64,000 bases of DNA from Setoptus koraiensis. Lineage: Eukaryota; Animalia; Arthropoda. Location of the stretch: contig CM106586.1 of assembly GCA_048013815.1 (NCBI GenBank), positions 9,238,001 through 9,302,000 of the forward strand, written 5' to 3'. A model generated the notes under the pieces. The model worked only from the letters and a program-made list of their open reading frames with translations. It was not told the DNA's origin and searched no databases. The translations under genes and the position numbers were made by a program. Below, piece after piece: positions 3,570-59,350 of this stretch. How positions within the stretch are numbered: position 1 is the stretch's first letter; every line of letters starts with the position of its first letter.

Positions 3570-4235
3570 TCAGAATACAGTCATTAAGGCAAACACTGTA
3601 TAAAAGAGCATACATGGGAAGGCTATAAGGATTTTAGAATATGGATTCTCTACAGCTGTGGTGAATAAGTTCGAAGCACCGATGGCGCACCATAGTATTG
3701 CTAGCGCTGATATTGAATAACCTATGATGTGTATTTTAAGATCAATTACTACGGAAATAGCGGATAACATGACCATGGGTAATAAACAGTAACCTAAAAC
3801 ACTGACCGTGCAAAAGAATGATAGTTCTTTTCCCTCGTCTGTCATGAGACGAAGAACAATGTGGAACGTTAGGCATCCGATGGTGCCCAAACCGAAAGTG
3901 TAGCCGAAATGTATTTTTCCTGCAAATAGCAACAGTGTACCAAAAGCTAGTAAGAAGACGAGGGGTCCAGCTAGGTCAGTTTCATGGAGAATATTTCTAT
4001 GATCGTCGAGATTTTTGAATGATAGCACAGCCCATGTTTTCCGCATTATTTGGTCAAGATTGATACCTAATTCCTCCATGAGCGGTCTCTCATCTTCAAC
4101 GCCGGTATACCGAGAGGATTGCATGTTGGATCCCATGGGGTCCCATGTTTCTTCGTATAGTTCGGCTGCTTTTGGCATTCTATTGCTGTCATCGTAGCTG
4201 TAGTCGGACCCCAGACCCATATTGAGCACGGCCAT
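3570..4235 (-). CDS. YIPF5: Yip1-family ER-Golgi protein (YIPF5/7-like)
   Basis: EDERPLMEELGIN, ETDLAGPLVF, GKIHFGY and SVLGYCLLPMV motifs, with multiple TM segments. First ATG is at 4235. Confidence 0.9.
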   Translation of the reverse strand: MAVLNMGLGSDYSYDDSNRMPKAAELYEETWDPMGSNMQSSRYTGVEDERPLMEELGINLDQIMRKTWAVLSFKNLDDHRNILHETDLAGPLVFLLAFGTLLLFAGKIHFGYTFGLGTIGCLTFHIVLRLMTDEGKELSFFCTVSVLGYCLLPMVMLSAISVVIDLKIHIIGYSISALAILWCAIGASNLFTTAVENPYSKILIAFPCMLFYTVFALMTVF

Positions 4236-32991: not shown

Positions 32992-34440
32992 CTAACATTC
33001 TTCTTTCGCAGAACAGCAAGGCGCAAAAATACAAGTGTGAGTCCAGTTATCTGTAAACGAATGCATCATTATGTTTTTGTGTCTAGCCAACTAGCAAGAA
33101 TGGGCATCAAATGAAAACATTGTCTCTCGTGTTTGAAGCCCTTTCCCTCTTTTTAATATAGATAAATTGTCTCTAATACATAACTAGCTAACCAGTTAGA
33201 GTGGGCAAGTTTGAGAGTTGAAAAACTGATAAGCTGGAGAGCAGAGTAATGCAGAGCAGCAGCGCTGCAGATCTGAAGAGCTGAAGAGCTGAATGGCCAA
33301 GAATCTAGAGAGCCTAAAGGGGCCTTGGTGAAAGAAAGAGACCCACTTGCTTTAACTGGATAATCTTAAACCATCATTGTTGTTGTTGTCATTGTTGTTG
33401 TTATATAACAGTTGTTATAAAAGTTGTTGTTATAGAAGTTGTTGTTTTTTTTTGTCGGTGGTGGTGTCTCTTTTGTTGTTGATGTTGCAGGGCTGGCCAA
33501 GGTTGGGCTAGCTTCAAAGTATAAGGCGCCTGTGGTGTTTTGTTGGGGGATGATTTACTTAAAAAAGTGAGCGAAAAAATCCGACAACAAATCTTGCTCT
33601 AGGATAGAGAATGATCTTGCATCTAGTGCTGCACTACAACAACGTCGACAAGGACGACTAGTCGCATTAATACAGATGCTTTATATCAAACGGACTATAG
33701 GCTACCACTGTATCGGTCACTGACCGAGACCAAGCTCGAATAAGCCAGCCAGCTCACCTCACTGTCAGTGGACGCAATTCCCAAGGATAGGCTGTCAATA
33801 ATTTTTATCTTGATCTGCGTCTTTCCAGTTCCGGTTGAGCGGATCCCGTTCACCGAACCGACGATCGCCATCAAAGCTAGATTGGCGCTCAATATCTAAC
33901 AGCTAAGCCAACTGTTCAGGCTGACAGGTTCAAGCAGCAATGGGGCAAAATTAGTAAATGTGTGTGTGTGTGTGTGTGTGGCCAAATGGCACGCCAGTCA
34001 AGTCGAAGTGTGGCGCACGTGATAGTTGTATCTATCGTGTTGTCGTTGTTTGTGTTGTTGCTGATGATGTAACGACAATAATAATAGTACATGTGTAATA
34101 ATGGATAATTTCTATGGGATTTATAGATAACATCTATGTACATGTAAATAATTGGTTGAGGGCAGCGGTTGCAATGGTGTCTAACATATCAATTTGTTAA
34201 ATACTCTCTGTTTTGGGCCAACAACATAAACACCTTGATAACACCATCAAGAACCAGGGGGAGAGACAGAGGCAGAGCGGGCGACACTTTTCTAGAAATG
34301 CGTCCCTCTATCTTGAGCTTGTCTCATATTGTTTGAATCATTCTTGTGTGCTTGGGGTGGTAAATAAGATTATGATCAACGACACACGACAAAGTTTTGT
34401 TGGTAGTGTCGCTTGGCGCCAATATACAAGCGCACGGAGG

Positions 34441-34443
<3 letters not shown>

Positions 34444-34497
<54 letters not shown>
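34444..34497 (+). repeat. (AG)n microsatellite
   Basis: Perfect dinucleotide run; one of many SSRs in 33-64 kb. Confidence 0.95.
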
Positions 34498-34498
<1 letters not shown>

Positions 34499-37400
34499 CA
34501 TACACAGGAAGTAAGAGTGGAGGAAGGCGCACACGAGCGCGATACAATTGAATAGGCCCCAATGGCAAGTCGCTATGCGCCACCGTTATGAGCATTGTGT
34601 GATATGTGTGTATGTGTGTGTGTGTGTTTCCCCAAAGGAGAACATATTTACACTTTGGGGCTTGTTGAAATTCAGTCAGTGGCATTTTAGCTTGCATGAA
34701 CAACAACAAGAGTTTATCTCCTTCTCGCTGGTTTGGTTCTTTTTCTACGTCTTGGGGAATTGGGGCTATGACATAACGTAGTGTGTCACATTATTATAGC
34801 CCCTTGCAAGTCAGATCACATACATGGGCCACTGTTTAGTATAACAGGGCGACAGCGACTGATAACCGGCGATAGCACGAGAGAGGTGAGCACGGCGCAC
34901 AGCATACATTACACAGTATAGGTTCACGCTTAGCTCTGACCCCCTTTACCCTTACGTCTTGCTTTTGAGTTGCACAGCGGCTGGCCAAGGCTCATATGAA
35001 ATCAATTGGAATGGGGGTCGTCACAGCACACCGTGCGCCACGCGTTGTCTATGATTTCGGCGATGATTGACTGTTGTTAGATCATCGTCACCGTCATCAC
35101 CATCGCCATCACGGGTGCCGACACCAGCAATCATAGCGCTCGATCATTACGCTTGAGAGGCACCGAGAGATAGATTGAGAGAGCGAAGAAGTCAACAAGT
35201 ATCGCTGATGCGAGCGATGGGCGGTTTGGACCGGCCCACAGGCAGCTCACGGCCGGCTTACAGGCAGCTGCCAATCGCGAGGCCGTGGGCTGTGTCAGTG
35301 CGAGTTGCGAGTCAGGTTGTGACAGCGCTAGAAGCGGTATGCCGGCCAGTAAAATTGCTGGCGCCGCTGCTCAACGCACACAAAGAAGATGGACACGGGT
35401 GCACGGACACACGAACACAAACAATTACACGCGGCAGTGTCACCGCTGTATAAGACGAGTCTAATCCAAATCGAAATAATCAAGGTGCAGGCGGGGGAGC
35501 GCCGGCGTTTAAGTGAGGCCGGTCAAATGAGACCGGTCAGATACGGACGCAAACGAGCGGGCACGCCGACCGGCTGATTGGGGGCGACTGACACACAGGG
35601 ACGATCGCGAATAATATCGTCATGATTGTGGCATGAGAATACTACGCTTCGCGTATTTTCCATGGCCCGTTCTCATGAGCCGATTGTGGCCCGCTGTTCA
35701 TTTGCACCCACAAACGCGCCCACAAACAAACAACATACCAGAGCAGTGTATGCATCACAACCACCAGTGGATAGCGATCGTTCATTAAGAGTGTCGCCCG
35801 ACAATCGCGCTGCAGCCCAGTTTTGGGTCGTTGGCGAAATGGCGCGCATTCGTGGCCGGCCAACTATCGTCCCAATTGGATATTCAGCGGGCGAGTCCGG
35901 CGCGGTCGTTAATGCTCTCTCTCTCTCTCTCGCTCTCTGGTCGCTCCGCTTAATGACGCTAACACATTCTTATCGCGGCGAGCGAGGCGATCAATTTTTT
36001 AAGGTCAACACAAAATCGCCACCCAAAAGAATTCGCGCCCCATTGTTCTTAGCTAGCGATAGCGAGGGAGTGAGTGCAATATATCGAGAGCCAGAGAATT
36101 TTCTGTTTGTGGGCCAGTTACGCGGCGCACACACACACACACACATTGGCATTGGTTCGCCGCGTCACATGGGCCCAGTGGCACCAGTGAACCAAAATGC
36201 AGAATGCGGCACAATTGTGCACAGGATCGAGCGAGCTGTGCGCATGTCTGATGGCGCGCGATGGTGGACAAGTTGGCTGAATCGAATCGAACATCGACGC
36301 GTTGCACACTACATAATGCGTGGTTGTGCGTCGAAATTCGATTGTGTGTGCGTTCGCAAGCGCTGCCAGCGGCAGCGGGACTGATTGTCAGTGCACAATA
36401 AAGTGCAGTAGTGATGATATTGTTGTATGGAAACTGTTGTTTTGCCTCTTCCATGGCTGCTGGCGCTGCTGCGATGGAAGAGGCAACGCACACACGCACA
36501 CACACACACTGCACGGCCCTTCGAACAGTCATTCGAGCAGCGAACATTCATAAAAGCGGCCGCGCTGGTGAACCCTATCTCGTGTGTGTGTGTGTGTGTC
36601 CACCTTGAGTTGTGCGCTGGTACACACACAGTGGAATAACTGCGCACAGCTTCTTCATCTTGTTCGCCACTGGTCTCTTCCCCCTTCCCCCGCCCTTTCC
36701 CCGCGTGCGTTCCCCGCTCTCTCGCTCGCTGTGTGTGTGCGCTCGCTCAGAGCGAGTCGCTCTGGTATCAACGCCCGCTGTGTGTATCCGATACACACAA
36801 TGTGAATGCGCCTGAGTGTGTGTGTGTGTGAGAGTTTTGGTCGAAATGAATTTGATTCGAATCGAATTTTGTTTTTGAGCGCACACACACACACAGACAC
36901 ACAAACGAACAGACGCACACACGCATACACATTATCCGCAGTACCGAGCAAACACACACACGCACACACACACACGCACACACACACACACTCGCTCACT
37001 CACATTTATCGATCACCCGGTTTACACGCACACACACACACACACACATAGGCAGACAGACAAGCGGACAGACGGACAGAGCGCATCTCGGGCATCGAGT
37101 GAGTGTAAGATGGAACAACAATAATCATAACAACACATCGGCACAAGCAGCAGCATCTTATCGCTTGGTTATGCTATACGTTATCCTATCTCGCACAACT
37201 AACGAGCCGCCGGACTGTCGAATTACAATAACGCCGGTAGTAATGAATAATAACCAATAATAGTAATAACAGCAACAACCGCAACAACAGCAACAACAGC
37301 AACGACCAGCAACGCCAAGACAAAAAAGCAAGCGAACAAGATCCGACCGACGAGAGCAACACACACACACACTTGTGAAGAATTAGAGGAATAATAATAA

Positions 37401-38258
37401 TAAAAGCAGCAACGTAACAATGTTGGCCCTTTTGCCATGGTTACGATGACCACCGGTCAGCCAGGCATCAGCTAAATCGTTATCATTACCTCCATTATCA
37501 TTGCTATTATTATTAAAAGCATTATTATTATTACTATGCTATTTTTTCTTACATAATCAACATTTTTATTACTGTTGTTGCTGGTGCCGTTGTTGCATTA
37601 TCATATACAGATAACTCTATATTCGCAAATATCATCATCGCAACACAGTACAGATATATTACACAGTACAGTTGTCGTTGTTGCCGTCGTTGTTATGAGT
37701 TGCCGCCACAGTGAAGCCAACACAGTGAACAATGAAACGACAATGCAACCAGCCATCGCCATGAATCGAACAAGAACAAAATACAGACGAACCCACCATA
37801 GATAAATAGATAGATAGATAGATAGATATATCACATAGTCGGTCGATGAATATATTTATAGGTGAATATATATTTGTATACACGTTGTATTTATTTATTT
37901 GGTTCATGTCCGAAACACACACACACTCACACTCACACATACCTAGCCGCCATGATGCTCAGAAGTCACTGGTCAAGCCATGTTACTACTCATTTGCTCC
38001 ACTACTCAGCCACCACGAGTTGTACGTGAATATCCATTCGTGAACACACACACACAAACCGACACACACACACCTTCTCGCAAGACGTGACCCTATGATA
38101 CTTACACGACGACAAGAAGAAGAAGAAGAAGAAGAAGAAGTAGAAAAAAGAGTTAGCAATTAATGGGCAATCAAGCGTTTGCAAACAAAGTGAAATCACA
38201 ATAATCAAGAGCTGAGAATAATAATCAAATAATAATAGCGGATGAACCAGATAATCGA

Positions 38259-38907
38259 ATGGCACAAGTTCATCGGCAACCGAGCAGCAATTACTTATTT
38301 GTTTGCTTGTTCTGGTCTATGGCCACTCTAGTCAGTGTCAATCTAATCGCAAATCAAATCTTCGCTGACGTCTTAATTGCACCTTCAGAACAACAACAGC
38401 CCACAACACAGCGCCATAATCAAAATTATAACAAAAATAGTAATAGGACTAATTCAGATATTTTATTATTAGACAATGCTGGACAATCGGCATTCGATTC
38501 GACATCGGATGGAATTTCAGTAAGTAAAAAACATACATATGGAATAACGAGAGACCTGGGTGCTAGTAGCCGGTATACGTCGTCGTCGTACGTGACCGAA
38601 CACAAATCGATTGAGGGAACCTCTCAACGAGCGCGCGACACTCTCAACAATTCATATTCATAGCGCACATAAAGCGAATCTCTTATACAGACGAACGCAC
38701 TCACTCACAAACTAACCCCAACGCTAACTCATCGAACTAAAATATTCTTATTGTTATTTTTGTTGTCCATCGTCGTTATTTTTCATCATCGCCATCGTCT
38801 CTTTATATAGGGTAAGGAAAGAGAAAAATTTCGATTTTATTGCAGATATAGAGTCTCATCAATTAAAAATGTCAACCAACTTATTTGCTATCTAAATTTA
38901 TTCACAT

Positions 38908-38962
<55 letters not shown>

Positions 38963-41900
38963 TGCACATACGCGTACACACATGCACGCACACACACACA
39001 CACACCCAAACAAAACAACATAAATTATTACTATGCGACAACTTTTAGTGGCAGACGAGTCGCTGGCTGCCAGTATAGGCATCAAGCCAGACTCAAAAGT
39101 GAGCGCCGCCATCGGCCAAAATGTGATATTAAATTGTCCTGTTAATTTTAAAGATGGTATAGAAAAACCATTCGTGGTAAATTGGATCAAATTAGGCTAC
39201 AAAATACCTATCTACATTTGGTACGCAGGCTATCCGCCACATATAGCCGAAGGCTACGATCACAGAGTTTCGCGTATTGGTCAGGCTTCATTGAATTTAA
39301 CCAACGTTAAAGAGACTGATCAAGGCCTGTATGAATGCAAAATATATTACCTAGATCGCAGGCCTGAGGACAACACCAACGGAACCTGGGTATTCCTTGA
39401 CGTCCAGGGTGAGTAAAATAAGCAACCTACCAACCGAGCAATGATTGGATATGACAGAGTAGATACGCATCAAGTACCGGTGTATATCAGCTTTGATTTC
39501 ATGGATATATGCAGGCCATCGAAATATTCTGAACACCTAGGCTTGCGATAATCCAACTTTGCAACGAGGAACGTAGTTTTTATAATTTTAGAGAGATTTT
39601 ACTACAGATAGAAACTTGTAGATTTTGTTAGCGAGTCACTGAAAAATGAAAGATTATCGTTGAAGCTATCAATGGAACGACGATAGCAATATGGTCCAAA
39701 CGAATCGTCCGCACACCTTCAATGAACTTGTCACTATGAATAGATTCATTTCAAAAAGGTTGGAACAGGTCTGATACGATACGATGGTTTCATATCCATT
39801 GAGGTTACCCATGGATATCCATAAGTGCTTATCGATATTCACCATTTAACGCATCTCTGTCTAATTTATACAGACAGACACGTTTATTATTTATAGAAAA
39901 TAGACAATGCACATCGGACTGTCACATAGAATACAATACTATCACGTTTATACGACCCAAATGTTAGACACACATCTACAACTGGGCACAGTTAGAAGGA
40001 TAAAGAAACTTATTGATGCGGCCGACAAGTTTCGGGGCTCCCCAAAATCCTTCCATTGGCTGAAATACATTCACACATAGCCAACCTATACATATATGAG
40101 TTGGTGCAATGGAGAGAGTTGGGTGACAGATAGACAGACAGATTTGAAAAGAGAGTAGACCCAACATGGCGAAAGTTAACCAGTGAATGCTTGCGGTTGC
40201 ACTTGTTTGGGTATGTTTGCGGCTAAATTCTAAGGGACCTGCCCAATTCTTGTGTGTGCATCTGAATGTGTGCAATCGTTGCTGTGTGTCGTCTATTCTG
40301 AACCAACTCAAAATGGATACCCATAATGGATGAATGCATGAATGATTTGTGTCCTAAGGCTATTGTCTCAACTATGAGTCAGTTGTCATTGGGAGTCATC
40401 TAGATTCTCTCTGTACCCTGCAGCATCGGTTCGAAAGGCGGCGAGCGAGAGAAGTAGGGAGAGAGAGAGAGAGAGGGAGGAAGAAAGAGAGAGAGAGGAA
40501 GAAAGAGAGAGGTCCAGCGAACTGGGCGAACTGAGTAAAGACAAAACGTCACAAATAGAAACAGAGTGAGAGTTGACGAGAGAAAGAGGATCGGAAGTTA
40601 ATGATCGTTGGTGGCTATGGAAATTTAATGTGTAAGCACACACAAGCACGCCAAATGCTACCGAATGTGGACACTCTCAAACAAGTGCCTAACTTGAGGT
40701 AGGTTCCGAGCGCCAAGTAAACAAGATAGTAAATGGGACTGATATAGAACATATGTGGTAATGGATGGACTAGATAAAGATTTTCTACGATCATCGTCGC
40801 CATTCCTGTGGCCGCCGTTGCTGCATTTACAATCAATTACACAGACAGACACACGCACGCACTGAGGGAGCACGCTGGCCAGCCCTCGGATGGGGCCAAA
40901 TATGTTGGGCCCACAAATATTGTGCAAACATAATGACTCTTATCGCGGCTGGTGTGTGGCTTGTTTGGCCGAGTATAAGTGAAGACAAGACCATATACAT
41001 GTATATATATATTTTGTCTTGGTATGTGCGTGTTTGTGTGTTGTGGATTAAAGTGAGGGCGATCTCAGTGAGGACCGCTCGATATTCTAACAAAGAAGAC
41101 TTGAATTGTTAATATGTCATCATTATTTGGCAGCAAAAAGTATTCTTATTTTCTTCTGTGTGTTCTGTTGTCGCTATTCTGTTTTCTTTCTCCTTTCTGT
41201 GTCTGTCCACACACACACACAACGCACACAACAGAAAATAGAAAAACAAGCTGGACGAAGACGACTCGCCGATGCCAGTTATATAATAGTTTCAATGTTG
41301 CCACCATACAACGTCATATGGTGTCGCGAGCTATGTTACTGGCTATGCTACTGCTGGCGAAATCCAGAATCAGCAACGACAATAGCGGCTACAACAACAG
41401 TAGCAGCGACAACAAAAAACACATTGTTACAGCAAACAAACCATTAAGGATCGGTGTGGCTCTAAGTCATGTCAATGTCAGATGCGATAGTAGCGATGTT
41501 GAGGAATCGAAAAGAATCAGATCAGCGCTTGATGTCCACTACAATAAGCGGTACTTCTGTATCAGCAAAACTGGCGTAGCCTAAAACTAACAACCAAAAG
41601 CCACCAGAGAAGAACAGCTGACGATCATTTGTCGCCAGCCATAGTCAAATATATATTCATGTGTGTGTGTGTGTGGTGCGTCTGCTTGTGCGACAACTGC
41701 TACTATAAGACAAAACCCTAATGTCTTACGGGCCCCTATTTTGCCCGTCATAGGTGCTAGTGCATTTTGCACAATGTACATTGTGTCTGCAGAGCTGGCC
41801 GGCTGGTCCGCCTCATCTGGCTCTGTTCTTCGAAGCCGAGAATAGATGAGATGATGGCGGACGTGATACAGATTGTGTGAGCACGAACCACTAACGATTA

Positions 41901-44900
41901 AGAGGGGGCACTAAAGAATGCGCCTAGCACCTAATACGTTAATCTGAATTGATTGTGCCTAGGTACACGCATCATCGTATCTATTCTCATCGTCTTTTCA
42001 TTGCCACTTTAGCGACGTTTACAAACGACTACAGAATAAAGGCAATTTATTTTAGCTTGTGTGCGTGTCAAAAGTTTCCTATCTCAGTTTAGCGAGACAC
42101 ACCGAGCTAGCGAGGGCGAGCGAGCGTGGCAACAGTGGCAGTAGTGGTGGCAAAAGTATATGTGCATTAGCAAGTTGGGCGAGACAGAAAAGTAGAGGGA
42201 TCGAGAGAGATAAGAAGAAGAAGAAGAGTTGGTCGTTAGACGCGCTGGTCTACATAGACAAATGGGCAGAGTGAACTATTATGAGGAGAGAGAAAGAGGG
42301 GTCCCCGCCAAATAATAATAATAACAGTAACGACAACGACAGCATAGAGTCTAGACTCTCGTTTTCATTTTCATTTTCATACAAAGCTTCTATTAATAGA
42401 CATTAGACGGTGGCGAATGAGATGTAGCTAAAGATGTAGCAGGCATTCTTTCCACAGCGGGCCGCCAAGCTAGCCAACCAGCTGTGGACTTACCTACGTC
42501 CAGCAACGTCAACGTCAGAGCGCCCCAGGCACAGCCTATTAGACGGGCCCCATTTTGCTACTTTTTACTTTGTCTTTCTTTCTCTGGAAGTTTAATGTAG
42601 CAAAGTTCTCGGCGCACTGCTACATTAAACATCTAAGTCCAACGAATAACACTTACTCAAGACGCCACCCAGACAGCCAGTCAACCAACCGACAATGCCT
42701 AATGGCGGTCTAGTGGGCCCGCAAGCGCTGCCGGTTCGGCCCATAGAGCACCAGACAAATGAAAACTTTATCATTGCGTTATTCCAATCTATTCTAACCT
42801 CAACTTTTATCTTTTCCCCTTTCTCTGTCGCTCTCTTATCTGATTTGATCGCATCTGATCCGCGATCCGATCTTTTACCACGCCCGATTGCGCATCGCAC
42901 ACGTTGTTGCGCGCAAAATACACGTGCGATAATAACCGTCTACTACCACTGCTACCGCTAACAACTTAAACAGGTTCGCCCCATTTTACAGAATCTCCGC
43001 CAGAAGTGACCTACGTTCGACCTGGCGATTCCATCTCATTGCCTTGTAGCGCCGAATCAACGCCAAGACCTATTATCAAATGGTATAAGGTAAGTTGACA
43101 CACAGCATAACAAGCGCGCGTAAAGCGCACTGTGTGGTAGTGCATGATCATTAATTAATTAATTGAGGCACACAACTAATCGACTAAACTCAATTACGAA
43201 TGCCATGAAACAATGCAATGCAATGCAATGCAACGCGACAATAGAATAAGGTAGCGATTGAAAGCGACGACGGACCCTATAGACTGAGACCGAGCCCAAA
43301 CAACAACAATAATAACGATGATGGTCATATGGAGCAACATTTCAGTTACGGCAATGTTCACGGCAATGGCAATAGATTAGAGCTGCTTATAGATAATATC
43401 CAACCTGGTGTGACAACTGGTGAATACATTTGTTTGGCCAGCAACAGCGAGGGCTCCGTGGAAGCCAGCGCCAATTTAGTAATAGCAGTGCCTGCTTACA
43501 TAACTCAAGCGCCCAGGAATCAGACAAGGCTTGAGGGTGATAGAGTTGAGATGATTTGTCAGGCAAGAGGAATGCCAAACAATATAACTTATAAATGGTT
43601 CTTCAATGATAGGCCAATTGATAAATCTAGATGGTCTATAGCAAAACGTGACGGAACGCTAATAATACAATCATTGACTAGCGACGATCAAGGCCACTAC
43701 AAATGTCAGGCCTCTAACGGTATAATGCCAGTAGTAATGTCACCAAAGTCTACCACCGCTACCGCCTCCACCAACACCCCCACCACCTCCACCGCTGGCA
43801 TTACAAACAACAACAACAACCATGTTATGCAGCATAGCAGCACTGCCACAGGGCTGCAACCCATTTACGCCGAAGTAAGCGCCTATCTAACTGTGGAATA
43901 TGCCGCCCGTGTTACCTATTCGCCGCCAATACAATTTTTACCACTTGGCTTGTCCGGAATTGTTCGTTGTTACGTGCAGTCGCAGCCGCCATTTACAGCC
44001 ATCCATTGGACGTTTAACAATTTGGCATTTGATCCAAATGTTATAGAAGATGTTGAAACATTGAAAAACGGCTCATTGCTATTTAAGCGCGTCACCCAAT
44101 CTAACGAGGGCAAATACCGGTGTACCCCAATGAACATACACGGTTCAGCTGGCTCGTCGGCCAACATGGAGGTGCGCGTAGAGGGTAAGTTGTTTGTTAT
44201 GTCTAACCAACTCTGCCTAGCCAACAACTGATCTGTCTGTTGCAGCAAGTGCCTATTGTGAGCGAGCGAGCAATACGTAGACAAAAAGCAAACAAAGGGC
44301 TTCGAGAGGCATTTCTCGCACCATCGCACCTATAAGCGATTATGACCTCAATTCAGCCCAGCAATTGAGGCTTCACTACCAACAGTAGTGGTTGCGCTAC
44401 TAGCTGCGGCAGCGAATTGAATCTAGCTGCCAATGCTGCTTGTTGTTTTGCGTTGTTTTCTCCTAGCTCTCGCTCACTTACTATTACTACTACTACTACT
44501 ACTGCCAGCAACTTTACTGGCAGCAACATTCCTAAAACTGCTGTTGTTGCTGTTTATTCCAATTTTATTCCTATCCAACAACACACAAATCCTCCTTCTT
44601 TTTACTGCTCCTTTTTGGGCCCCGTATTTCGCTCTATTATGTTATTAATCGACGGCCAAACGATGATGATTAGATCCGCCCGAATTTGTGATAAAACCCG
44701 CCGATTTATACAAGGCCAATGTCGATAGCCAAATCAAATTGCCTTGCAATGGTCGTGGCCGACCCAAGCCCAGTGTTACCTGGCGCAGGGTAAGTACACA
44801 CAGACACACATCAAACGTAATCTAGTTTAAAAGAATAGTCTGGCACTGATTTAGATGTTGTTTTGGTTGGCGGCCACTGGCTGTTCGGGCTCGCCACCAC

Positions 44901-46838
44901 CGCTACTACCACTCATTTATTTTTATATAAACACACACCGTGGCGCTGTTTCATGCAATTTGAGGCGCCACCCATACAGAGCTCGGTAGATCTCCCGATC
45001 CGCATTTAGATCGACTGTTGCCAGACAAAAGCCAGCTGTGTGTATAAAGGGCTTAGATTCAGAGATTTGGCAAGACACTTACACTCTGACCGTTTCTTTT
45101 TTTTGTCTCTCTCACTCTTTTTGTGTGTACTGCTTGTCCATCGGTTGTTGCTGTTGCTCTTGGCTAGGCCGATGGTTATAGAATAGCCCAAGATAGGGTA
45201 GATTATCGTGATGGAAATTTGTTGATACACAATTTACGTAAAGAGGATCATGGTAAATACGAATGCGTCATAGAAAATGACATTGCCACCCTGGTCTCGT
45301 CCACACTACTATACGTAGAGGGTAAGTGTCGTTCAGAGGGACTAGACGGGTGCCCTTGCTGCGCCTTGATGGTGTCCATCTTAAAAATTGATGCCCACAT
45401 TGCCCCCATGATGATAGGCGGAAGATATGGGGCCACTGCTGTGGCTCGCAAATCAGCCAAGTAATCTAATAATCTTGCCGGTTCTCTTATTTCCCTGCTC
45501 CTTCTCTTATGCAACAACAACGATTACCTCGATCAATGCCATCATTTCCATTTGTGCACATCAACAAAAACAACGACAACAACAACAACAACAACAACGA
45601 CAACAACGACAACAACGACAACAACAACAACATCAACATCAACAACAACAACGAAAAACAAACGCAAACTACAGAGACCACGCCCCACAGTCCGTCCCAA
45701 TTTAATGTTCACACCAAGGCCTGGTCAGCCACCCTCACCTGGTTGCCGGGTTATGACGGTGGCTACGAGCAAACGTTTGTTGCTTGGTACAGGCAGGTGC
45801 AGCAACAGCAAGTGCAACTTCAATTACAACAACAACCGCTAGACTCAACACAATTGTCAACATTGCCAACAACAGTAGCGCCCTATATAACAACAACTGT
45901 GATATCATCAGCATCATTATTAACGGGCACAAATATCAACAGTGATAACAGTGGTCTAACTGACCAGCACACACATCCAACAATTGTTGGCGACTATTCA
46001 ACAAGCGGCGGCGGCGAGCCCGATCAAAGCAATGGTTCATCGTTGCCTAATTCACAACAGACAGATAGTTCAACAGACACCTCCAGTGATAACGATAATC
46101 ATTATAAGTGGCAGTCCATAGTTGTTCAACCAGCAGGCTCGCAAACAATAACCATCGACAACTTGCTCGAGGACACCGAATATGAATTTTATGTTAGACC
46201 GCGCAATGTCATAGGCGACGGTTCTAGATCGCAAATTGTGCGCGCCAAAACAGGACGTAAGTATATCCGTGACAACAACAACACAAGTAGTCGCAAGAAA
46301 CAGTCCAAAAAACTACTCCTTGCGACCGTTAGCATCTCGCTTGCCCGTTATGGCTAGTTCTTGTGACCCCCTCATTAGTGGTTGCGCAACACGCGTTGCT
46401 AGACGATGCTGGTGATGGTGTCGTTGCTACCTCCTAATTTGGTTGGATGATGGTGGCTTCAATTGAATTGGGGACGCACCAATATCACCACCAGTATCGG
46501 CAAATGATCCCGGCAACTGACGATATATGTTACACTTGTTATTTTGTTACATTCACTCACTCGCTCATTCTTCATTTGTATGATCTATCGCCATATTATC
46601 GCCCGGCAAACAACAACCATGTTTGTTCTATATAGGCTCAATAACGGGAGTTCTGGTACTGACAACGGAATCGGTGACAGCCACCATTAAAGCAGCAGGT
46701 AAGTATGGGTGTGTTAGTTGTTTGTTTGTTAATAATAGTCCATCTCTCGCTGGTGTCTCGGCGGCATTTTTCTCCACCTGCAACTCCGATGACTACTGCT
46801 CGCATTCGCCTTACTCACCCTATCTTCTCACTGTCACT

Positions 46839-49800: not shown

Positions 49801-52800
49801 CCCCCCCCCCGTTTGGGTGCGCCACTTTTGGCCTGGCGACCGCCAACATTGTGTTGTTTAATTAATTAACGATCAATTCATGGCTCTCGTTATCGCCGTT
49901 GTCGGCGCTGTTGTTGCTGTTGTTGTTGTTGTTGCACAATCAATAATCAATCATTGATTGTTGATTGCGCGGCGGATGGGAGCATTTCATCTCTAATCAG
50001 TGTCTCCAAACGGCGAACGTGCACAAGAGATTGATTGCTTGTGATTGCGCCGCGAGCTGGCCCTTTGTGCCACTCGCAAGAATTGTCGCCTTCCCCCCCG
50101 GCCAGCCAGCCAGCCAGCCGCACAAAGAAGCAGTTTGCTGGCTGGCAAGCGCGCCCCATTGGGTCCCTATTGGGTCGCTATGCTCGCAATGCGTGTTTGC
50201 GTTTGCTTACCTAGCTTGTAGACAGCAGCGTTGTGTAGAAACACAAACAAGACAAGCGCAAAGTTGTCAGCGTGACAAGCTCGCGCGTCTTGGGCAAATA
50301 TCGACTGGGGATTTAACTGTGTGATGGGTTAGCCCAGTCGAGATTCGACCGGGCTCGTTTGTGTGCCTCCCAGGCAGCAGGGGAGAGAGCGAGATAATTT
50401 TTGTGCTCGTTGATCCCGTGGCGGGGAGCGCGTGGCCCGTGGCTCGTGTCACGCCAGACACTTGAGCTTGTTTTGTGTGTGTGTGTGTCGCACACTAACT
50501 GCTTGTGCGATTGGCCCCGCCGGCCCCAATTGGCACAAGCAGGCCCTTATGCATTGGCGAGCCCGCTTGCTTTGGGGCCCAACGGAGCGGCCATTGTGGG
50601 GCCAGAGGATGGCGCCAGCGCACACACACACACACTAACCGTTAGTGACTAACGTGACTCCGTGCGGCAATTATGATTGCCGCGCGCAACGTTACGTAAC
50701 AACAAGGCGCGCGTGGCAAGGAGTTAGCTGCCTCAAGTGACTTGAGTGCGAGATTTCGTCTGCCTATTGCTGGCTTGCCGGCTGGCTGACGCAGTGCTGG
50801 CTTGTTTAGAAGTTTCTATTATTCGGCCTGTGTGACACAACCGTTGTGACAACAACGCCGCGGCGCCCAGGCCAGCGACAACCGAATGACACTCATCTAT
50901 TATTGACAACATTAAAAGTCGGCTGGGCGCGTCGAGCCCCCCTCCCCGCTACAAGCTCGTCGCTGATATTTCTGGGGCGCCTTGGAAACATCTACATGCG
51001 ATGCGATGCGTGTTTGTGTGAATGTTTTAATGCATGTTTTTGCGCGTTTAACTTGTTCCAAACTTGTTATAGTTTGTAGGCGCCGCCATAAGGGGCGGAT
51101 GGGGCCGGGAGCGGCGCGCGGCCGAGGGCCACTTAGCTGTGCAACTTAGCTTAGCCAGTTAACTTGATTAGCACAGAAATTAATTTAGTGCGTGCCACTC
51201 ACCAGCGAGAGGCCCGGCCGGCCGGCCAGCCGGCCGTCTTGCCAGCCAGTCAGTCAGCCAGTCAGTCAGCCAACATGCGAGTCGGCCAGCCGGCGAGCCA
51301 GTCCGTGAGCCAGCCGGCGAGCCAGTCAGCGCGATACAGCCAATATAGGATATATCGGTGTGTGGCAAGCCAGCGCGGATAATAATGTATGTTTCTGTGC
51401 GCGCGTGTTTGGTTGCTGAATTTATTTCTGCGTGTCGCGCGCACACTGACTATCTCATTTGGGGGGATTGTTGTTGTTGCCATTGTTGGGCGCGCGTCGC
51501 CGTTGTCGTTGTTGTTGTCGTTGTTGTTGCTGCTGTTATGCGTCGATGTAGATGTCGACACGGCCATCGACGTGTACATTGAATGAGAATGAGCGTCTCG
51601 CCTTGTTTTCGCTTCTTATTTTGGGGCTCGCGCGGGGCGCCGCGCTGGCGAGCTGGCGAGCAAGTGTCGGCGTCGACGGGCGCATAACAAGTGCAGCGCG
51701 GATCATTGTTGGCTTCTGTGCTGCCTGTGCCGCTGCAACGCCAATTGGAGCTTTGCCTCTTCCGTTCCGGCAACGCGCTCGCCGGCCAAGCTGGCCGAGC
51801 TGGCCGAGCTGCCGGCCGACAGTGGCGGTCGCGAAAGCGTTGCGTTTGTGCAAGCCCAGCCAGCCTGGCTAGTTAAGCTGCTGCCGAGGGGTCAAGCAAA
51901 GCGAGCGATGCGCCGCAAGAGGATGCCTCGCCAGTGGAGAATAATAAGTTTTTGGCGCTAACGCGTGCAAACAGATACACACACACACACACACACACAA
52001 ACAACAACAACGCGTGCGGCACAGATATATATTGGCTTGCGGATAAGTATAGGCTCGGCCAGCGAGTTACCAGCGAGATAACTGATGATGATCAAGCGCA
52101 ACAACATCAACGCCAGCGCTACATCGCTGCCAGTGGCCGTTGCCGGGCCGGCCTGGCCGCCTGGCGCTGATGATGCGGCGCGACGCAGACAAGCAGGATG
52201 AGAGGGATTAATCAAATCACACACACACGCGCGCGCCCAGCCAGCCAATTGCCAAGACGCCTGGCCGGGCAGTGCGCTGGCCGGCAGCGCTTGGCCGCGT
52301 CTCGGGCCGCGGCTCGGGCACCGTCTCAAGCGGCGTCTTGGCTGCCGCAAATGGCCAGTCGCGGCTGCAACTCGACGGTGTGGCCTCGTTTTGAATAACC
52401 TAGTTTATTGGCGCCCCACCAGGGCCAAACAAACGCGCGGCCAATGTATGCGGCCAATGTATGTATATGGGCCTGTCGCGCGGGCCATTGCTCCTGGCGC
52501 TGGCGCGCAATATCCAGCGCCGGCGGACACTGGCCGGCAATGTTGTTTTACATCATTGCTATCTATTTATGGCCCGTGTGTGTGTGTGTGTGTTGTTATG
52601 TATGTATGACATGGGCGAGTGTCGAGGGTAAGAAACGGGCAAAAAAGCGGCGAGCCCAAAAACAAGATAACAATGGTAATAATAAACAACGAATGAAGTG
52701 AAGCGAAAATGGAACCAACTTGATATTTTTCATTAGCTAACTAGGCTGGTGCGGGGCCCGGCCGCCACGCAGCGCCACACAGGGCCATAGAGCGCCCCAT

Positions 52801-55800: not shown

Positions 55801-58800
55801 GCAAATCGACGACGCACGTTACATAACACGTGACACGTGACATCATAAACGGCATTCGCGCAGGCATTCGAAAGTCCGAGTACCGAGTGTGACGAGCACC
55901 CTTCATCACTCATCAGCAGAGAGTCCAAAAGCGGGCAGCCTTGGATCGCTTCCGGCCTTCGGCGACCGACAGCGATCGAGTGGTTCGTTGTTGGAGAGAT
56001 TCGTTGAGCGCTTGAATAAAATTCTACAAGTGTCGTCCGATTTCGCCCGATCATCATCGTCAACGGCGAGAGTGGCGCCAGTTCCAGCAGCCAGACAGCA
56101 GCACAACGATAATAATCTAGCCTGCAACATGTTCGATCACGTTGATCGTCCCAACAATGCAACTGACCATCATTTAGGCCAATCTATTTTGATTAATGGA
56201 CACTCGGGCAACACAGAAAGCCACTTGGCGGGCCCCGGCGAACACCAGCAGCACCAGCCCCAACGCCAACATCAGCGACCTGAGCCAGCGCCTAGAGCGT
56301 CCGTGAAAGCTGGCTGTGGCGGCGGCGTTGACAAGAGTAATTACGACAACAGCAACCGCCGAACGGTAGCCAGCAAAAACAATAACAACAACAACAACAG
56401 CAGCAACACTGGTGACTTTAGCGCCATTACGTCACAGTTGATTGCTGGACAGTGGCCAGTGGGGGTGGGTGCTACCAGACAGCGGTGCCACTCCAACAGC
56501 AGTCTAGACGACTATTGGGTGCGACAACCGTCGAGCAGAAAGTGGGGCACGCTCACTGTGGCCGGCGCAAAATTGGCCGAACGAAGGGCCGCTTTGGCGT
56601 CCGAGGAGGCGCGAAAAAACATACTGCTGGCGGGCACAGCCGACGAAATTGATGGCCACAATGGCGTTCATAATGATGATCTAGACAAACACCGTCAGCC
56701 ACAACAACAACGCGACCAATTTAGTTTCAATATGGTGGCTGGCTCGTCGGCGGCGCCGGCGCCGCCACACCAGCCACTGGCTGCAACAACGACACAAACT
56801 AACAATGACAACGGCACAATAGTTGACAATCATCGTTCCTCTATATCCTGTCCACAATCGCCACTTATTAGCCAATCTTACGCCTGTCGCCATTTCGATC
56901 AGCAACCGGCGCCCATATTCTTGTACAACAACAACCAACAACAACAATCAGACTGTTACATCCATCATTCGCAGCAGCCGCCGCCCCAGTCGCTCGATAA
57001 TGAGGCAACGACGCGCCACTCGCAAGCCGCCGGCCCCCCGTCGCATCACCAGCAACACGCTCGCCACCTACCCTACATCGATCTAACTAAACCGCAGCCA
57101 ACTCACGCCCACTACCCGATACCGTTGCCCGCGTTACCGAGACGCGCCACAATGTCAGGTGACCGGTCAACACATCGATTGGAGCAAGCGGCTTCAAAGT
57201 GTCAATCGTCGACGGGCCGAAACCGGGCGCCTATAGCGAGCTCGCTCACGCAACCCTGTCAAGCCAGCAGTGACCAACAAAACAGCGGTGACATGAACCT
57301 ATTGCAAATGAGCAACTTGGACCGTTTCCAATACTGGCTAGACACTCAGGCCAGCATTAGATCGGAGCCGCATGCCGGCGACGAGCCGCCACTTCCGGTG
57401 TGTCCGTTGTCTCATAGCGCTCGGCCAGCTCAGCAGCTTGGCAGCAGTTATAATGGGAGCGCGTCACTTCATCGAAACTATTCACTCAATCAGCACAACA
57501 ATTATTCCATTGATAACAACAATCATCATCCACATATAACGGGCTTTTATAGCAGTATGAGTGTGCCGCGAAACAATCATCACCAGTGTCACTATCTCGA
57601 CAGCAACAATCAAGCGGCCAATCGGCACTGGCAGCAGTCAGACTCGAAGTGTTTCAATTCTAATAACATGAACAGGCCTGTGCCACCCCCGCCACCGCCG
57701 CCGCCGCCGCCCCCTCCGCCCAAACTTCCGGCCCGATCTGGTGTTCTGGAGGCGCGCGAGCATTGCTTGCCTCGAGATTCAGCGTCCCGGTTTTCGTCGT
57801 CCGATGGGGTCGCGAGGCGGAGGCAGCGACCCGCGCCCATTGACATGAGCGGACTGTCGCTGCCGACCAATGTCACCGGCACCCACAATGGCGACCAGAA
57901 CGTTTGGATCAAGCAATCGAGTTTCAGCAACGAAGAGACCAGCCACAACGGGTACCGTTACATGGGATGCGCGGACGACGAAACGGACGACGAGACGGCG
58001 CAAGCTCTGTACAATTTGCGCGCCATTCAATCCGAGATAGCCATTCATCGTTGCCAGCAACAACAACAACAACCCTGGCACGGGGGCCCAAATGCGGCTC
58101 ACCTGTCGCAGCAGCAACAGCATCACTCGGCGCCCGGGGGTCAGCATCAGGCGTTCAGTTTTGATGCGGCCGCGGCGCGACGAGTGCAGCACGTCAGCAG
58201 CAACAGTATGGCACCGTTGCACCAGCAGCAACAACTGCTGCACCGGCGCCACTTTGTTGGCTGCGACGCCTTCGACCAGCTGGCCAACCAGATGCAACAA
58301 CAACAACAGCAGCAGCAACAGCAGCAACATCAACGACGACAAGTGATAAACGACAACGGCGCCATGACGCGCATATCGTCGCATCATTTTGTGCCACCAG
58401 GTGAATCTTTCTATTTGCGCACGCCACCTAGCGATGAGGCCCCGGCCCAGATGAGTGGTGGCTGTCCAATGACGGCGTCCGGCCGGCATCAGCAGCAGCA
58501 ACATTGCAACGGTCTGCTGGTGCTCGATGTGGCCAGCCAAAGGCTGCTGTCGGACGGATGCAGCAGCACGGATCCGCACGGACAGCCGCCCGTTCCGCCG
58601 CATCGGTACCGTTCAGTTCAGGTGCAAACGTCACCGTTGGGCTCTAACGACGAACTGTTTTCATTGAACAACAACGACACTGCAACCGAACCAGCCGACG
58701 ACAGCGAATACAATCACTGTTACGATGGCGTTTGTGATGACGTAATTGACGCTGACCAGCAACAGCAACAGCATGGGTTGCACAATATGCACAATATGCA

Positions 58801-59350
58801 CAATATGCACAATATGGCAAGCAGCGGAAGTAGAAGGACCTTTTGCGGCCAGGACAATCAGGCGCGTCAGGCAAGCTCAGTTGGCATGTGTCACCAGCAG
58901 TCGGACGATTATGACGACATTGTCAACGAGGAACACGACGAGACAATTGTGGCCTCAGGTGAAAACTTTTCGCGCCGGTCACAATTCAGAAAGAGTCGAT
59001 TGGCTGGCGTTCACACGATGGACCTGGACAACGAGGCGGCCAACGAGGATCGACATTCCAGTTTCAGTTGTCAATCGAACGCAAACTCCAATTGCAATTC
59101 AACCACAAATTCAAACTCGGACGGCGAGGCCAATGTGAGATCTCACAATTCAAACATGTCGTCGTCGGCCAACGATCAATCGGTGGACGAAAACTACGAA
59201 TTTGACATGCAACAGCAGCGCCAGCCTCAACAACAACAACAACAACAACAAGAGCAAGAGCGGCAGCAGCAGCAGCAAGCTCATAATATAATATACTCAA
59301 AGGTCAACAAGCAAAACAGACCGAAATTGATTGACGAACAGGCAGTGTAA
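38259..59350 (+). CDS. tutl: Turtle/IGSF9-like receptor (signal peptide, 5 Ig, 2 FN3, TM, long tail), about 2480 aa as modelled
   Basis: Exons built by phase-matching GT-AG sites: 38259-38519, [38811], 39049-39408, 42974-43089, 43245-44184, 44674-44789, 45168-45321, 45675-46256, [46636-46698], 47190-47882, 48269-48862, 49110-49194, [55655-55713], 55920-59350. Total 7455 nt, divisible by 3. Bracketed exons are tentative. Ig C...W...Y.C motifs, FN3 LTWLPGYDGG and TM AGIMGGVLFFIAAIVISVC are present. Confidence 0.85.
38811..38811 (+). other. Candidate 1-nt microexon (G) of tutl
   Basis: TATATAG|G|GTAAGG preceded by a ~118-nt AG-free, U-rich zone with CTAAC motifs. It bridges the phase-0 donor (38520) and the phase-1 acceptor (39048). 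Confidence 0.5.
53258..53342 (+). repeat. 11-bp minisatellite GGATATTGTG(G/A) x~7
   Basis: Direct tandem units, intronic. Confidence 0.9.
53870..53932 (+). repeat. 7-bp tandem repeat G(T/C)GTTCA x~9
   Basis: Direct tandem units, intronic. Confidence 0.9.
54294..54443 (+). repeat. Abutting GC-rich minisatellites: 14-bp GCCGAGTCGGGCTC x4 and 16-bp GGCCAGCCATAACAG(G/C) x6
   Basis: Direct tandem units without spacers. Confidence 0.9.
54677..54967. mobile_element. Tc1/mariner-type MITE, 291 bp
   Basis: Perfect 26-bp TIRs AAGGGTGTTTCAATCAGAACCTGGAT (54677-54702 and 54942-54967), flanked by TA on both sides; no internal ORF. Confidence 0.88.
55279..55363 (+). repeat. 13-15-bp minisatellite (GC)ATT(A/G)CATCACTAT x~5
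   Basis: Direct tandem units. Confidence 0.85.

What the first reader, a model, noticed from the sequence alone, without database searches (positions are those of the whole stretch)
38520..39078. Candidate single-nucleotide exon that switches the turtle reading frame on
Seen: the signal-peptide exon ends at a strong phase-0 donor (TCA|GTAAGT, 38520), but the first acceptor of the Ig1 exon (TTTTAG|TG, 39048) is phase 1. Direct joining frameshifts to a TAG at 39076. Inside the intron is TATATAG|G|GTAAGG, preceded by CTAAC motifs and ~118 AG-free nt. Including G38811 alone gives GIS-V-ADESL in frame. A longer coding exon ending at 38811 is blocked by the in-frame TAG at 38808-38810. Established: 1-nt exons are extremely rare (reported for Arabidopsis APC11), and recursive AG|GT splicing is known in animals. 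Inference: two-step, recursive-like splicing that leaves one base could act as an on/off (NMD) switch for a neuronal adhesion receptor.
Basis: partly seen in the sequence, partly recalled or inferred. Interest (0 to 1): 0.8.

Follow-up and report, generated by a model that had tools for sequence, protein, structure and literature searches.

The report
Probable one-base exon in mite turtle
The first two coding exons of a mite neuronal adhesion-receptor gene (turtle/IgSF9) fit together in frame most plausibly if a single intronic G, flanked by two complete short introns, is kept as a one-base exon; this is known in plants and fungi but I found no report in an animal nuclear gene, and no RNA read here confirms it.

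Summary
Exon 1 (ATG 38259 to 38519) ends in phase 0 at GTAAGT. The Ig1 exon (39049-39408) starts in phase 1. Direct joining stops at TAG 39076. TATATAG|G|GTAAGG sits at 38804-38817. A DNA-like run reproduces the sequence, so it is not an assembly error. A second mite species (L001) keeps the same frames and motifs.

The anatomy favours two tandem introns (291 and 237 nt) around G38811:
- All seven donors I could place in this gene are GTRAGT.
- On a small matrix built from them, 38520 and 38812 score well above the in-frame alternative GTAAAA at 38524, which scores like an ordinary GT.
- The Ig1 donor has the same GTRAGTAAAA shape and uses its first GT.
- AG 38809 follows two CTAAC motifs and a 119-nt AG-free, pyrimidine-rich zone, like the gene's real acceptors.
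- It is the only one of 23 AG-N-GTRAG sites in the window with such a zone.

No RNA junction was obtained: the one read-laying run gave no spliced contig.

My estimates are one-base exon 0.6, weak tandem donor 0.2, other 0.2. The proposed NMD on/off switch has no support. One-base exons are proven in plants and Fusarium (the same AGGGT). This would be a new member of that kind, and as far as my literature search shows the first in an animal nuclear gene.

The parts
38259..38519 (+). Exon 1 coding part: ATG plus 87 codons, with a signal-peptide-like hydrophobic stretch, ending TCA in phase 0
   Evidence: Translation. The hydrophobic maximum is 2.12 and it is the only ATG-initiated open frame of 15 codons or more ending at a GTRAG donor with a hydrophobic maximum above 2 in 33000-39048. 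In L001 the indels are multiples of 3, and 7 of 87 third positions differ against 11 of 174 first and second positions.
38520..38810 (+). Proposed intron A (291 nt): donor GTAAGT 38520-38525; CTAAC 38712-38716 and 38724-38728; CTAAA 38737-38741; AG-free zone 38691-38808 (71% pyrimidine in the last 69 nt); acceptor AG 38809-38810
   Evidence: In L001 the donor, the three CTAA motifs, a 96-nt AG-free zone and the AG are all kept, although the tract itself is only 74% identical.
38524..38529 (+). Rival in-frame donor GTAAAA (TAA|GTAAAA), which is positions +5/+6 of the GTAAGT consensus; it would give ...SVMADE...
   Evidence: It ranks about 700-1100 of 3737 GTs on a matrix built from the gene's own donors. 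It reads GTAAAG in L001.
38811..38811 (+). Proposed single-nucleotide exon (G), the first base of the codon G|TG (Val)
   Evidence: It restores the frame to SDGISVADESL. AG|G|GT is conserved in L001 at 642-646. There is no RNA evidence.
38812..39048 (+). Proposed intron B (237 nt): donor GTAAGG 38812-38817 in the context AGG|GTAAG; purine-rich stretch 38817-38830; conserved block 38846-38910; (CA)n 38911-39005; AG-free zone 38854-39046; acceptor TTTTAG 39043-39048
   Evidence: The donor ranks 10-86 of 3737 GTs. AGGGTAAG occurs 6 times on the + strand and 0 times on the - strand, and three of the six are donors of this gene placed by homology. The block is 63/65 identical to L001, P about 5e-8 against intron background. 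The AG-free zone is 194 nt.
39049..39408 (+). Ig1 exon (360 nt, phase 1 to phase 1), V-set Ig domain; donor CAGG|GTGAGTAAAA at 39409
   Evidence: It is 98% identical in protein to L001, with 1 of 238 first and second positions changed against 16 of 119 third positions.
39076..39078 (+). Premature TAG reached if exon 1 (donor 38520) is joined directly to 39049

Best explanation
G38811 is most likely a constitutive single-nucleotide exon of the mite turtle/IgSF9 gene.

The 529 nt between the signal-peptide exon and the Ig1 exon are two complete short introns in tandem. Intron A (38520-38810) has GTAAGT, a cluster of CTAAC/CTAAA branch-point-like motifs, a 119-nt AG-free pyrimidine-rich zone, and then the first AG. 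Intron B (38812-39048) has GTAAGG in the gene's usual AGG|GTAAG context, a strongly conserved block that may hold its distant branch point, an AG-free (CA)n zone, and then the first AG.

The 3' splice site of A and the 5' splice site of B overlap on the same few bases, so the two introns must be removed one after the other. If A goes first, ligation creates TTTCAG|GTAAGG, a better donor than either original context, much as at a recursive splice site. If B goes first, A's acceptor becomes TATATAG|GTGGCAG. Either order yields ...GGA ATT TCA GTG GCA GAC..., which reads G-I-S-V-A-D. Skipping the G gives a stop 10 codons on.

Shown: the sequence, the frames, the site quality relative to this gene's other sites, and conservation in one related species. 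Inferred: that these sites are actually used, and the order in which the introns are removed.
For: 1. The frames are incompatible unless one base is added, and the gene is under strong purifying selection (Ig1: 1/238 non-third against 16/119 third-position changes versus L001). A productive route must therefore exist.

2. All seven donors placed in this gene are GTRAGT: 39409, 43090, 44185, 44790, 45322, 46257 and 46699. On a matrix built from them, 38520 ranks 1-169 and 38812 ranks 10-86 of 3737 GTs, whereas 38524 ranks about 700-1100.

3. There is an internal control. The Ig1 donor has the same GTGA|GTAAAA shape, and the frame shows that the first GT is the one used.

4. AG 38809 looks like this gene's real acceptors. 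Its AG-free zone is 119 nt, against 70-218 nt at six acceptors placed by homology. CTAA[C/A/T] lies near the start of the zone, as at most of those acceptors. Two CTAAC occur in 119 nt against about 1 per kb in the window.

5. It is unique among 23 AG-N-GTRAG sites in having a long AG-free zone.

6. L001 keeps GTAAGT, the three CTAA motifs, a 96-nt AG-free zone, AG|G|GTAAG and the purine-rich stretch after it. The surrounding intron is only about 70% identical and has indels.

7. Val at the junction matches the [V/I/L][G/A][E/D] motif of outgroup mite orthologues, none of which has Met there.

8. No other signal-peptide exon with a GTRAG donor lies within 5 kb upstream.

9. There is precedent. 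The validated Fusarium CYP621A one-base exon is the identical AGGGT, and plant APC11 and VPS55 also have one.
Against: No RNA evidence was obtained. The only read-laying run returned a DNA-like run, plus a 266-nt contig lying wholly inside the Ig1 exon, and no spliced junction.

Only one close relative exists in the collections searched. Conservation of the 14-nt motif alone is weak (13/14, P about 0.05), and the rival GT at 38524 is conserved as well.

Long AG-free runs are partly compositional in this genome. Runs of 100 nt or more are as frequent on the antisense strand of the gene region (18 against 18).

The donor matrix rests on seven sites.

I found no report of a one-base exon in an animal nuclear gene. 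The U2AF and U1 footprints overlap at the site.
Confidence: 0.6

Rival explanations
1. Tandem (delta-4) donor. There is one 525-nt intron, spliced from the weak GTAAAA at 38524 to 39048, giving ...GIS-VM-ADESL... The strong GTAAGT at 38520 and the internal AG|G|GTAAGG are unused or are decoys.
For: It restores the frame with a single ordinary intron. GT 38524 is kept in L001, as GTAAAG. Alternative donors 4 nt apart are a known class (own knowledge). It needs nothing exotic. Phase 1 at this intron matches the phase-1 acceptors seen in outgroup mites.
Against: TAA|GTAAAA lacks both G at -1 and G at +5, and ranks about 700-1100 of 3737 GTs on the gene's own donor matrix, while a perfect GTAAGT lies 4 nt upstream. 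The same GTRAGTAAAA shape at the Ig1 donor uses the first GT. The second GT is simply positions +5/+6 of the consensus. This model leaves two conserved, strong and harmful decoys unexplained: the donor at 38520, and the full CTAAC + AG-free zone + AG + GTAAGG set. Outgroups never have Met at the junction residue.
Confidence: 0.2
2. Regulated switch. The one-base exon exists but is facultative. Direct 38520-to-39048 splicing gives a premature stop and NMD, so inclusion of the G turns turtle expression on or off.
For: Direct joining does give a stop 10 codons downstream. The block at 38846-38910 is far more conserved than neutral sequence, and it could be a regulatory element.
Against: Nothing here bears on regulation. 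The conserved block is equally well explained as intron B's distant branch-point region, because it sits at the start of the 194-nt AG-free zone, as CTAA motifs do at other acceptors of the gene. APC11 is reported as a constitutive one-base exon. Proximity favours pairing 38520 with the nearer 3' splice site.
Confidence: 0.1
3. Other route. Either the Ig1 exon is joined to an unseen first exon further upstream, so that exon 1 serves another transcript, or exon 1 is joined to the weak acceptor GACGAG| at 39059, giving GIS-SLAAS.
For: Outgroup mites place the intron before Ig1 at other positions, and their signal-peptide exons could not be found within 6 kb. Long first introns therefore occur in this gene family. 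Acceptor 39059 is in frame with donor 38520.
Against: No ATG-initiated, hydrophobic, phase-1 exon with a GTRAG donor lies in 33000-38258. Exon 1 is conserved as coding up to 38519 and lies 529 nt upstream on the same strand in both species. Acceptor 39059 is the third AG after the AG-free zone and has no tract of its own.
Confidence: 0.1

Closest known systems
Fusarium CYP621A one-nucleotide exon (PMC12940212, 2026)
   Same: It has the identical five-base core AG|G|GT. The flanking exons are off by exactly one base, the G is the first base of a codon, the core is conserved across related species, and automatic gene models miss it.
   Different: That case is fungal, in a P450 gene. It is confirmed by SRA reads and by an intronless paralogue used as a ruler. 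Here there are no reads and no intronless relative, and only two species to compare.
Plant one-nucleotide microexons in APC11 and VPS55 (PMC4674806; PMC8831610)
   Same: A single base lies between two short introns and is needed for the frame. The donor after the base is a strong GTRAGT-type site. The authors also propose intron definition with sequential removal.
   Different: Those are plant genes, validated by RT-PCR, reporter mutagenesis and RNA-seq, and conserved across land plants. In APC11 the base is an A and its identity does not matter. In VPS55 the exon is alternatively included in some lineages.
Drosophila zero-nucleotide recursive splice sites (ratchet points; Burnette 2005 and Duff 2015, as cited in PMC4674806; details from own knowledge)
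   Same: A 3' and a 5' splice site overlap and are used in sequence. After the first ligation a consensus donor is regenerated, here TTTCAG|GTAAGG.
   Different: Ratchet points leave no base behind and subdivide introns of tens of kb. Here one base is kept, it is essential for the frame, and the two introns are only 291 and 237 nt.
Tandem alternative 5' splice sites 4 nt apart (GTNNGT; own knowledge)
   Same: GTAAGTAAAA offers two GTs 4 nt apart, and the second is the in-frame one.
   Different: In such pairs usage follows site strength. Here the in-frame site is very weak and the out-of-frame one is perfect.

Membership tests
Single-nucleotide exon (APC11 / VPS55 / CYP621A type) | The flanking coding exons are out of frame by exactly one base, and no longer exon can fill the gap | tested here: met
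   Exon 1 is phase 0 at 38519, Ig1 is phase 1 at 39049, and TAG 38808-38810 blocks a longer exon.
Single-nucleotide exon (APC11 / VPS55 / CYP621A type) | AG|N|GT with a credible 3' splice site before it and a credible 5' splice site after it | tested here: met
   There are 2x CTAAC plus CTAAA, then a 119-nt AG-free zone (71% pyrimidine in its last 69 nt), then the first AG. The donor AGG|GTAAGG ranks 10-86 of 3737 GTs.
Single-nucleotide exon (APC11 / VPS55 / CYP621A type) | Conservation of the AG|N|GT core and its signals in related species | tested here: inconclusive
   Everything is kept in the one close relative available (L001), but the motif alone gives P about 0.05. No further relatives turned up in the metagenome scans.
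Single-nucleotide exon (APC11 / VPS55 / CYP621A type) | cDNA or RNA-seq reads that carry the extra base at the junction | tested here: inconclusive
   The only read-laying run gave no spliced contig. X1 is DNA-like, and X5 has one 266-nt contig inside Ig1.
Zero-nucleotide recursive splice site (ratchet point) | AG and GT directly abut, and nothing is retained in the mRNA | tested here: not met
   One G (38811) lies between AG and GT, and the frame needs it.
Zero-nucleotide recursive splice site (ratchet point) | It subdivides a very long intron | tested here: not met
   The whole interval is 529 nt.
Zero-nucleotide recursive splice site (ratchet point) | The first ligation regenerates a consensus donor | tested here: met
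   Exon 1 ending ...TTTCA, plus G, plus GTAAGG, gives CAG|GTAAGG. This is shown by sequence only.
Tandem delta-4 alternative donor | The downstream GT is a usable donor by the species' own standards | tested here: not met
   TAA|GTAAAA ranks about 700-1100 of 3737 GTs, and 7 of 7 donors placed in the gene have G at +5. The sample is small.
Turtle / IgSF9 receptor (identity of the host gene) | N-terminal V-set Ig1, further Ig domains, FN3 domains and a transmembrane segment, with the closest named relatives called turtle | tested here: met
   Pfam V-set/Ig/I-set and fn3 hits. The gene is collinear by tblastn with the 1061-aa Fragariocoptes setiger model P0047, through the transmembrane region. 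Sources name the hits 'Protein turtle' in spiders. I did not count the domains individually.

The most novel reading that the evidence does not exclude
An animal nuclear gene contains a constitutive one-nucleotide exon (G38811). Two tandem short introns around it are removed sequentially, and the first ligation builds the donor for the second. The arrangement is conserved in at least two mite species. As far as my literature search shows, this would be the first spliceosomal one-base exon in Metazoa. It would also imply that animal annotation and read-mapping pipelines systematically miss such exons.
Probability: 0.55. Interest if true: 0.75.

Novelty: new member of a known kind. Interest (0 to 1): 0.62.

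Why it matters
[quoted passage not shown] It would show that an AG|N|GT site can be processed by an animal spliceosome working through intron definition in short introns. It would also offer a natural bridge between ordinary splicing and recursive (ratchet-point) splicing.

There is a practical side. Gene finders and spliced aligners cannot represent such an exon. This turtle gene, and any similar genes, will therefore be annotated with a wrong N-terminus, a frameshift, or as a pseudogene. The same genome seems to use long AG-free zones with distant CTAAC-type branch points, which makes it a good system for studying how the 3' splice site is chosen by scanning.

Tried and rejected
RNA evidence. 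Two run searches and the single read-laying run gave no junction contig. X1 proved DNA-like. X4 gave only a 141-nt contig, 5% diverged and collinear across the donor. X5 gave one contig inside Ig1.

More relatives. The exon 1 peptide found only L001 in the protein collection. A metagenome scan with the exon 1 peptide and another with a 27-nt piece of the conserved intron block both found nothing. The exon 1 peptide does not align to the outgroup loci L002, L003 or L005. Their signal-peptide exons could not be placed, apart from one weak phase-1 candidate in L005.

Assembly error or pseudogene: rejected.

A longer microexon ending at 38811: rejected because of the in-frame TAG.

An exon running from 38811 to a downstream donor: rejected. 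The only GTs there are GTCTCA and GTCAAC, in the wrong phase, and L001 differs in length by 40 nt.

An upstream alternative signal-peptide exon: none found in 33000-38258.

Intron A as a repeated, introner-like element: there is no other copy in the window or the loci.

A known RNA family or a stable structure in the conserved block: none (Rfam E 0.12 for an irrelevant bacterial sRNA; fold z-score +0.97).

The AG-free zone as a stand-alone acceptor predictor: downgraded, because runs of 100 nt or more are as common on the antisense strand.

My first rank calculation used shifted coordinates. I replaced it.

A gene model from an annotation pipeline would not be evidence of splicing.
Full report
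**What is there**

Reading 38200-39500 confirms each element of the finding at the stated coordinates.
- An open frame starts at ATG 38259 and runs 87 codons to TCA 38517-38519. It has a signal-peptide-like hydrophobic stretch.
- It is followed by GTAAGTAAAA, with GTs at 38520 and 38524.
- The next coding exon begins after TTTTAG (39043-39048) and encodes a V-set Ig domain in the frame that starts at 39051. The exon (39049-39408, 360 nt) is therefore phase 1 at both ends.
- Between the two exons lies TATATAG|G|GTAAGG, with AG at 38809-38810, G at 38811 and GT at 38812-38813.
- Direct joining gives ...SDGISWQTSRWLPV*, with TAG at 39076-39078.
- Keeping G38811 gives ...SDGISVADESL.... The donor at 38524 gives ...SDGISVMADESL.... 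The acceptor at 39059 gives ...SDGISSLAAS....

The host gene is a turtle/IgSF9-type receptor. It has Ig and FN3 Pfam hits. By tblastn it is collinear with a 1061-aa model from the eriophyoid mite Fragariocoptes setiger, through to the transmembrane segment. Database sources name the spider homologues 'Protein turtle'.

**It is not an artefact**

Run X1 covers exons and introns alike at about 85-175x, so it is DNA-like. Its contigs match 38154-38897 and 39020-40400 without a single difference, though it may be the sample the window was assembled from.

Independent support comes from L001, a 2683-nt contig from a related species in another sequencing run. There exon 1 is four codons longer but again ends in phase 0 at TCG|GTAAGTAAAG. 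The motif TATATAG|G|GTAAGA is present, and the Ig1 exon again starts in phase 1 after TTTTAG.

The gene is clearly functional. Between the two species the Ig1 exon has 1 change in 238 first and second codon positions, against 16 in 119 third positions. The exon 1 indels are multiples of three.

**RNA evidence was sought and not obtained**

Two run searches listed seven runs. X5 has one 266-nt contig (39089-39354, depth 2) that lies wholly inside the Ig1 exon. X4 has a 141-nt contig with 7 mismatches that is collinear across the donor at 38520. The decisive test is therefore still open, and everything below is anatomy and comparison.

**Donors**

Using the F. setiger protein as a guide, I placed seven donors of this gene:
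- AGG|GTGAGT at 39409
- AAG|GTAAGT at 43090
- AGG|GTAAGT at 44185, 44790 and 45322
- GAC|GTAAGT at 46257
- CAG|GTAAGT at 46699

All seven have G at +5. On matrices built from these seven sites, 38520 ranks 1-169 and 38812 ranks 10-86 among the 3737 GTs on the + strand. The rank depends on whether exon positions are counted. 38524 (TAA|GTAAAA) ranks about 700-1100, which makes it an ordinary GT (the rank line used shifted coordinates and is superseded).

The second GT of GTAAGTAAAA is simply positions +5/+6 of the consensus. The Ig1 donor has the same shape (GTGA|GTAAAA), and there the frame shows that the first GT is used. AGGGTAAG occurs six times on the + strand and never on the - strand, and three of the six are donors I placed by homology.

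**The acceptor**

The AG at 38809 ends a 119-nt AG-free zone, rank 21 of 3615. The last 69 nt of that zone are 71% pyrimidine. Near its start the zone holds CTAAC twice and CTAAA once, against a window-wide CTAAC density of about 1 per kb.

Six acceptors of this gene placed by homology have AG-free zones of 194, 218, 149, 92, 212 and 70 nt. Most have a CTAA[C/A/T] motif near the start of the zone. Other first-stage notes on this genome describe the same acceptor architecture in other genes. Those notes are unchecked, and I tested the idea only on this gene.

One caveat matters. AG-free runs of 100 nt or more are as common on the antisense strand of the gene region (18 against 18). Such a run alone does not mark an acceptor, and part of the signal is compositional.

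The combination is nonetheless singular. Only two AG-N-GT sites exist in the interval, and the other has no donor. Of 23 AG-N-GTRAG sites on both strands of the window, this one has a 119-nt AG-free zone against 41 nt or less for every other.

**Conservation**

Unconstrained parts of the interval are about 70% identical between the two species and carry indels of 29-40 nt. Against that background L001 keeps all of the following:
- GTAAGT
- the three CTAA motifs
- a 96-nt AG-free zone, although the tract itself is only 74% identical
- the AG|G|GTAAG core (13 of 14 bases)
- a purine-rich stretch after the core
- a 154-nt AG-free zone before the Ig1 acceptor

The core alone is only weakly significant (P about 0.05), and the rival GT is conserved too.

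A block at 38846-38910 is 63/65 identical (P about 5e-8). It is more conserved than synonymous sites of the Ig1 exon. It matches no Rfam family and has no notable fold. It begins at the start of intron B's AG-free zone and contains TCAAC and CTAAA motifs. Its simplest reading is the distant branch-point region of intron B, but this is an inference.

**Weighing the models**

With a one-base exon, every conserved strong signal has a job, and the only coincidence is a GT that belongs to the donor consensus anyway.

With the weak tandem donor, two things must both be idle decoys inside a short intron of a strongly constrained gene, and both have been kept in two species. One is a perfect out-of-frame donor 4 nt upstream. 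The other is a complete branch-point, AG-free-zone, AG and donor set.

The junction residue also leans the same way. Outgroup mite orthologues show [E/Q/D]-[V/I/L]-[G/A]-E-G-L at the homologous place and never Met. That fits V-A-D-E better than V-M-A-D-E, though this alignment is short.

No other signal-peptide exon with a GTRAG donor lies within 5 kb upstream.

I put the one-base exon at about 0.6, the tandem donor at 0.2, and other routes together at 0.2. Those other routes are a far-upstream first exon and the weak acceptor at 39059. The switch idea is a sub-case of the one-base exon, at about 0.1.

**Mechanism proposed**

Both introns are short (291 and 237 nt), so intron definition is expected. 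The AG of intron A and the donor of intron B share the bases that U2AF and U1 would each need, so the introns must be removed in sequence.

If A goes first, ligation yields TTTCAG|GTAAGG. That is a better donor than TCA|GTAAGT, and it is the logic of a recursive splice site with an offset of one base. If B goes first, A's acceptor becomes TATATAG|GTGGCAG.

The sites and frames are shown. Their use and the order of removal are inferred. Nothing supports regulated skipping or an NMD switch.

**Comparison with what is known**

One-base exons are experimentally validated in three places:
- Arabidopsis APC11 (PMC4674806)
- APC11 and VPS55 across land plants (PMC8831610)
- Fusarium CYP621A, whose core is the identical AGGGT and which is confirmed by SRA reads (PMC12940212)

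Full-text searches for the usual phrasings found no report in an animal nuclear gene. The placozoan single-base cox1 exon is mitochondrial.

The site is not a Drosophila-type ratchet point, because a base is retained and the intron is short. If real, it is a new member of a known kind rather than a new kind.

**Evolutionary note**

In the outgroup mites I looked at, the intron before Ig1 appears to be phase 1 but sits at different places. In L003 the likely acceptor (placed by eye) lies about 35 codons upstream of the EVGEGLTL motif. In F. setiger it lies about 6 codons downstream of the window's acceptor. The intron position is therefore labile in this lineage. Whether intron A was inserted just before the last base of an older exon 1 that ended ...TCAG|GTAAGG cannot be tested with the data available.

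Noticed in passing
window 38846-38910: An intronic block is 63/65 identical between the window and L001, while synonymous sites of the adjacent Ig1 exon differ by 13% and other intron parts by about 30%. It has no Rfam match and no significant fold. It sits at the start of the 194-nt AG-free zone before the Ig1 acceptor and contains TCAAC and CTAAA motifs, so it may be a distant branch-point region or a splicing enhancer.
   Followed up: partly
window 38641-38675: A second conserved block lies inside the proposed intron A. It is 32/35 identical to L001 (P about 0.003) and is flanked by indels of 29 and 32 nt. Its function is unknown.
   Followed up: no
window 38000-59500, + strand: Acceptors of the turtle gene placed by homology follow AG-free zones of 70-218 nt, often with CTAA[C/A/T] near the start of the zone and little polypyrimidine tract next to the AG (for example CGCTAACAACTTAAACAG| at 42973). 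However, AG-free runs of 100 nt or more are equally frequent on the antisense strand (18 against 18), so part of this is base composition.
   Followed up: partly
window 38396-38533 (run X4): A 141-nt contig of very high word depth (1254) carries 7 mismatches and no gaps, and is collinear across the 38520 donor. It may come from a third, roughly 5%-diverged strain or species labelled as the same organism. X4-X7 may hold intermediate relatives useful for the conservation test, but they could not be read further.
   Followed up: no
L003 5860-6010; L005 6690-6730; proteins P0003-P0030: In many other mites the Ig1 exon extends further 5' through a conserved [E/Q][V/I/L][G/A]EGLTL motif and a variable Q/N-rich linker. 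The intron before Ig1 appears to be phase 1 but sits at different positions in different lineages, which suggests intron sliding, loss or gain.
   Followed up: partly
L005 2198-2320 (GCA_019968535.1, Fragariocoptes setiger model P0047): The annotated first exon of the F. setiger turtle model (RDERQYMPHQRR...NNNNNNKPA) has no start codon and no signal peptide, and looks like an ab initio filler. A short candidate signal-peptide exon in phase 1 (ATG 3522, donor AGA|GTGAGA at 3580) lies in its first intron.
   Followed up: no
window 55889-59350: A single 1153-codon open frame rich in Q, N, H and S runs appears to be the cytoplasmic tail exon of the turtle gene, far longer than in the F. setiger model.
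   Followed up: no
window 12515 and 52625: Two further AGGGTAAG sites lie on the + strand, outside the exons I placed. They are probably ends of phase-1 exons, of another gene at 12515 and of an unplaced turtle exon at 52625.
   Followed up: no
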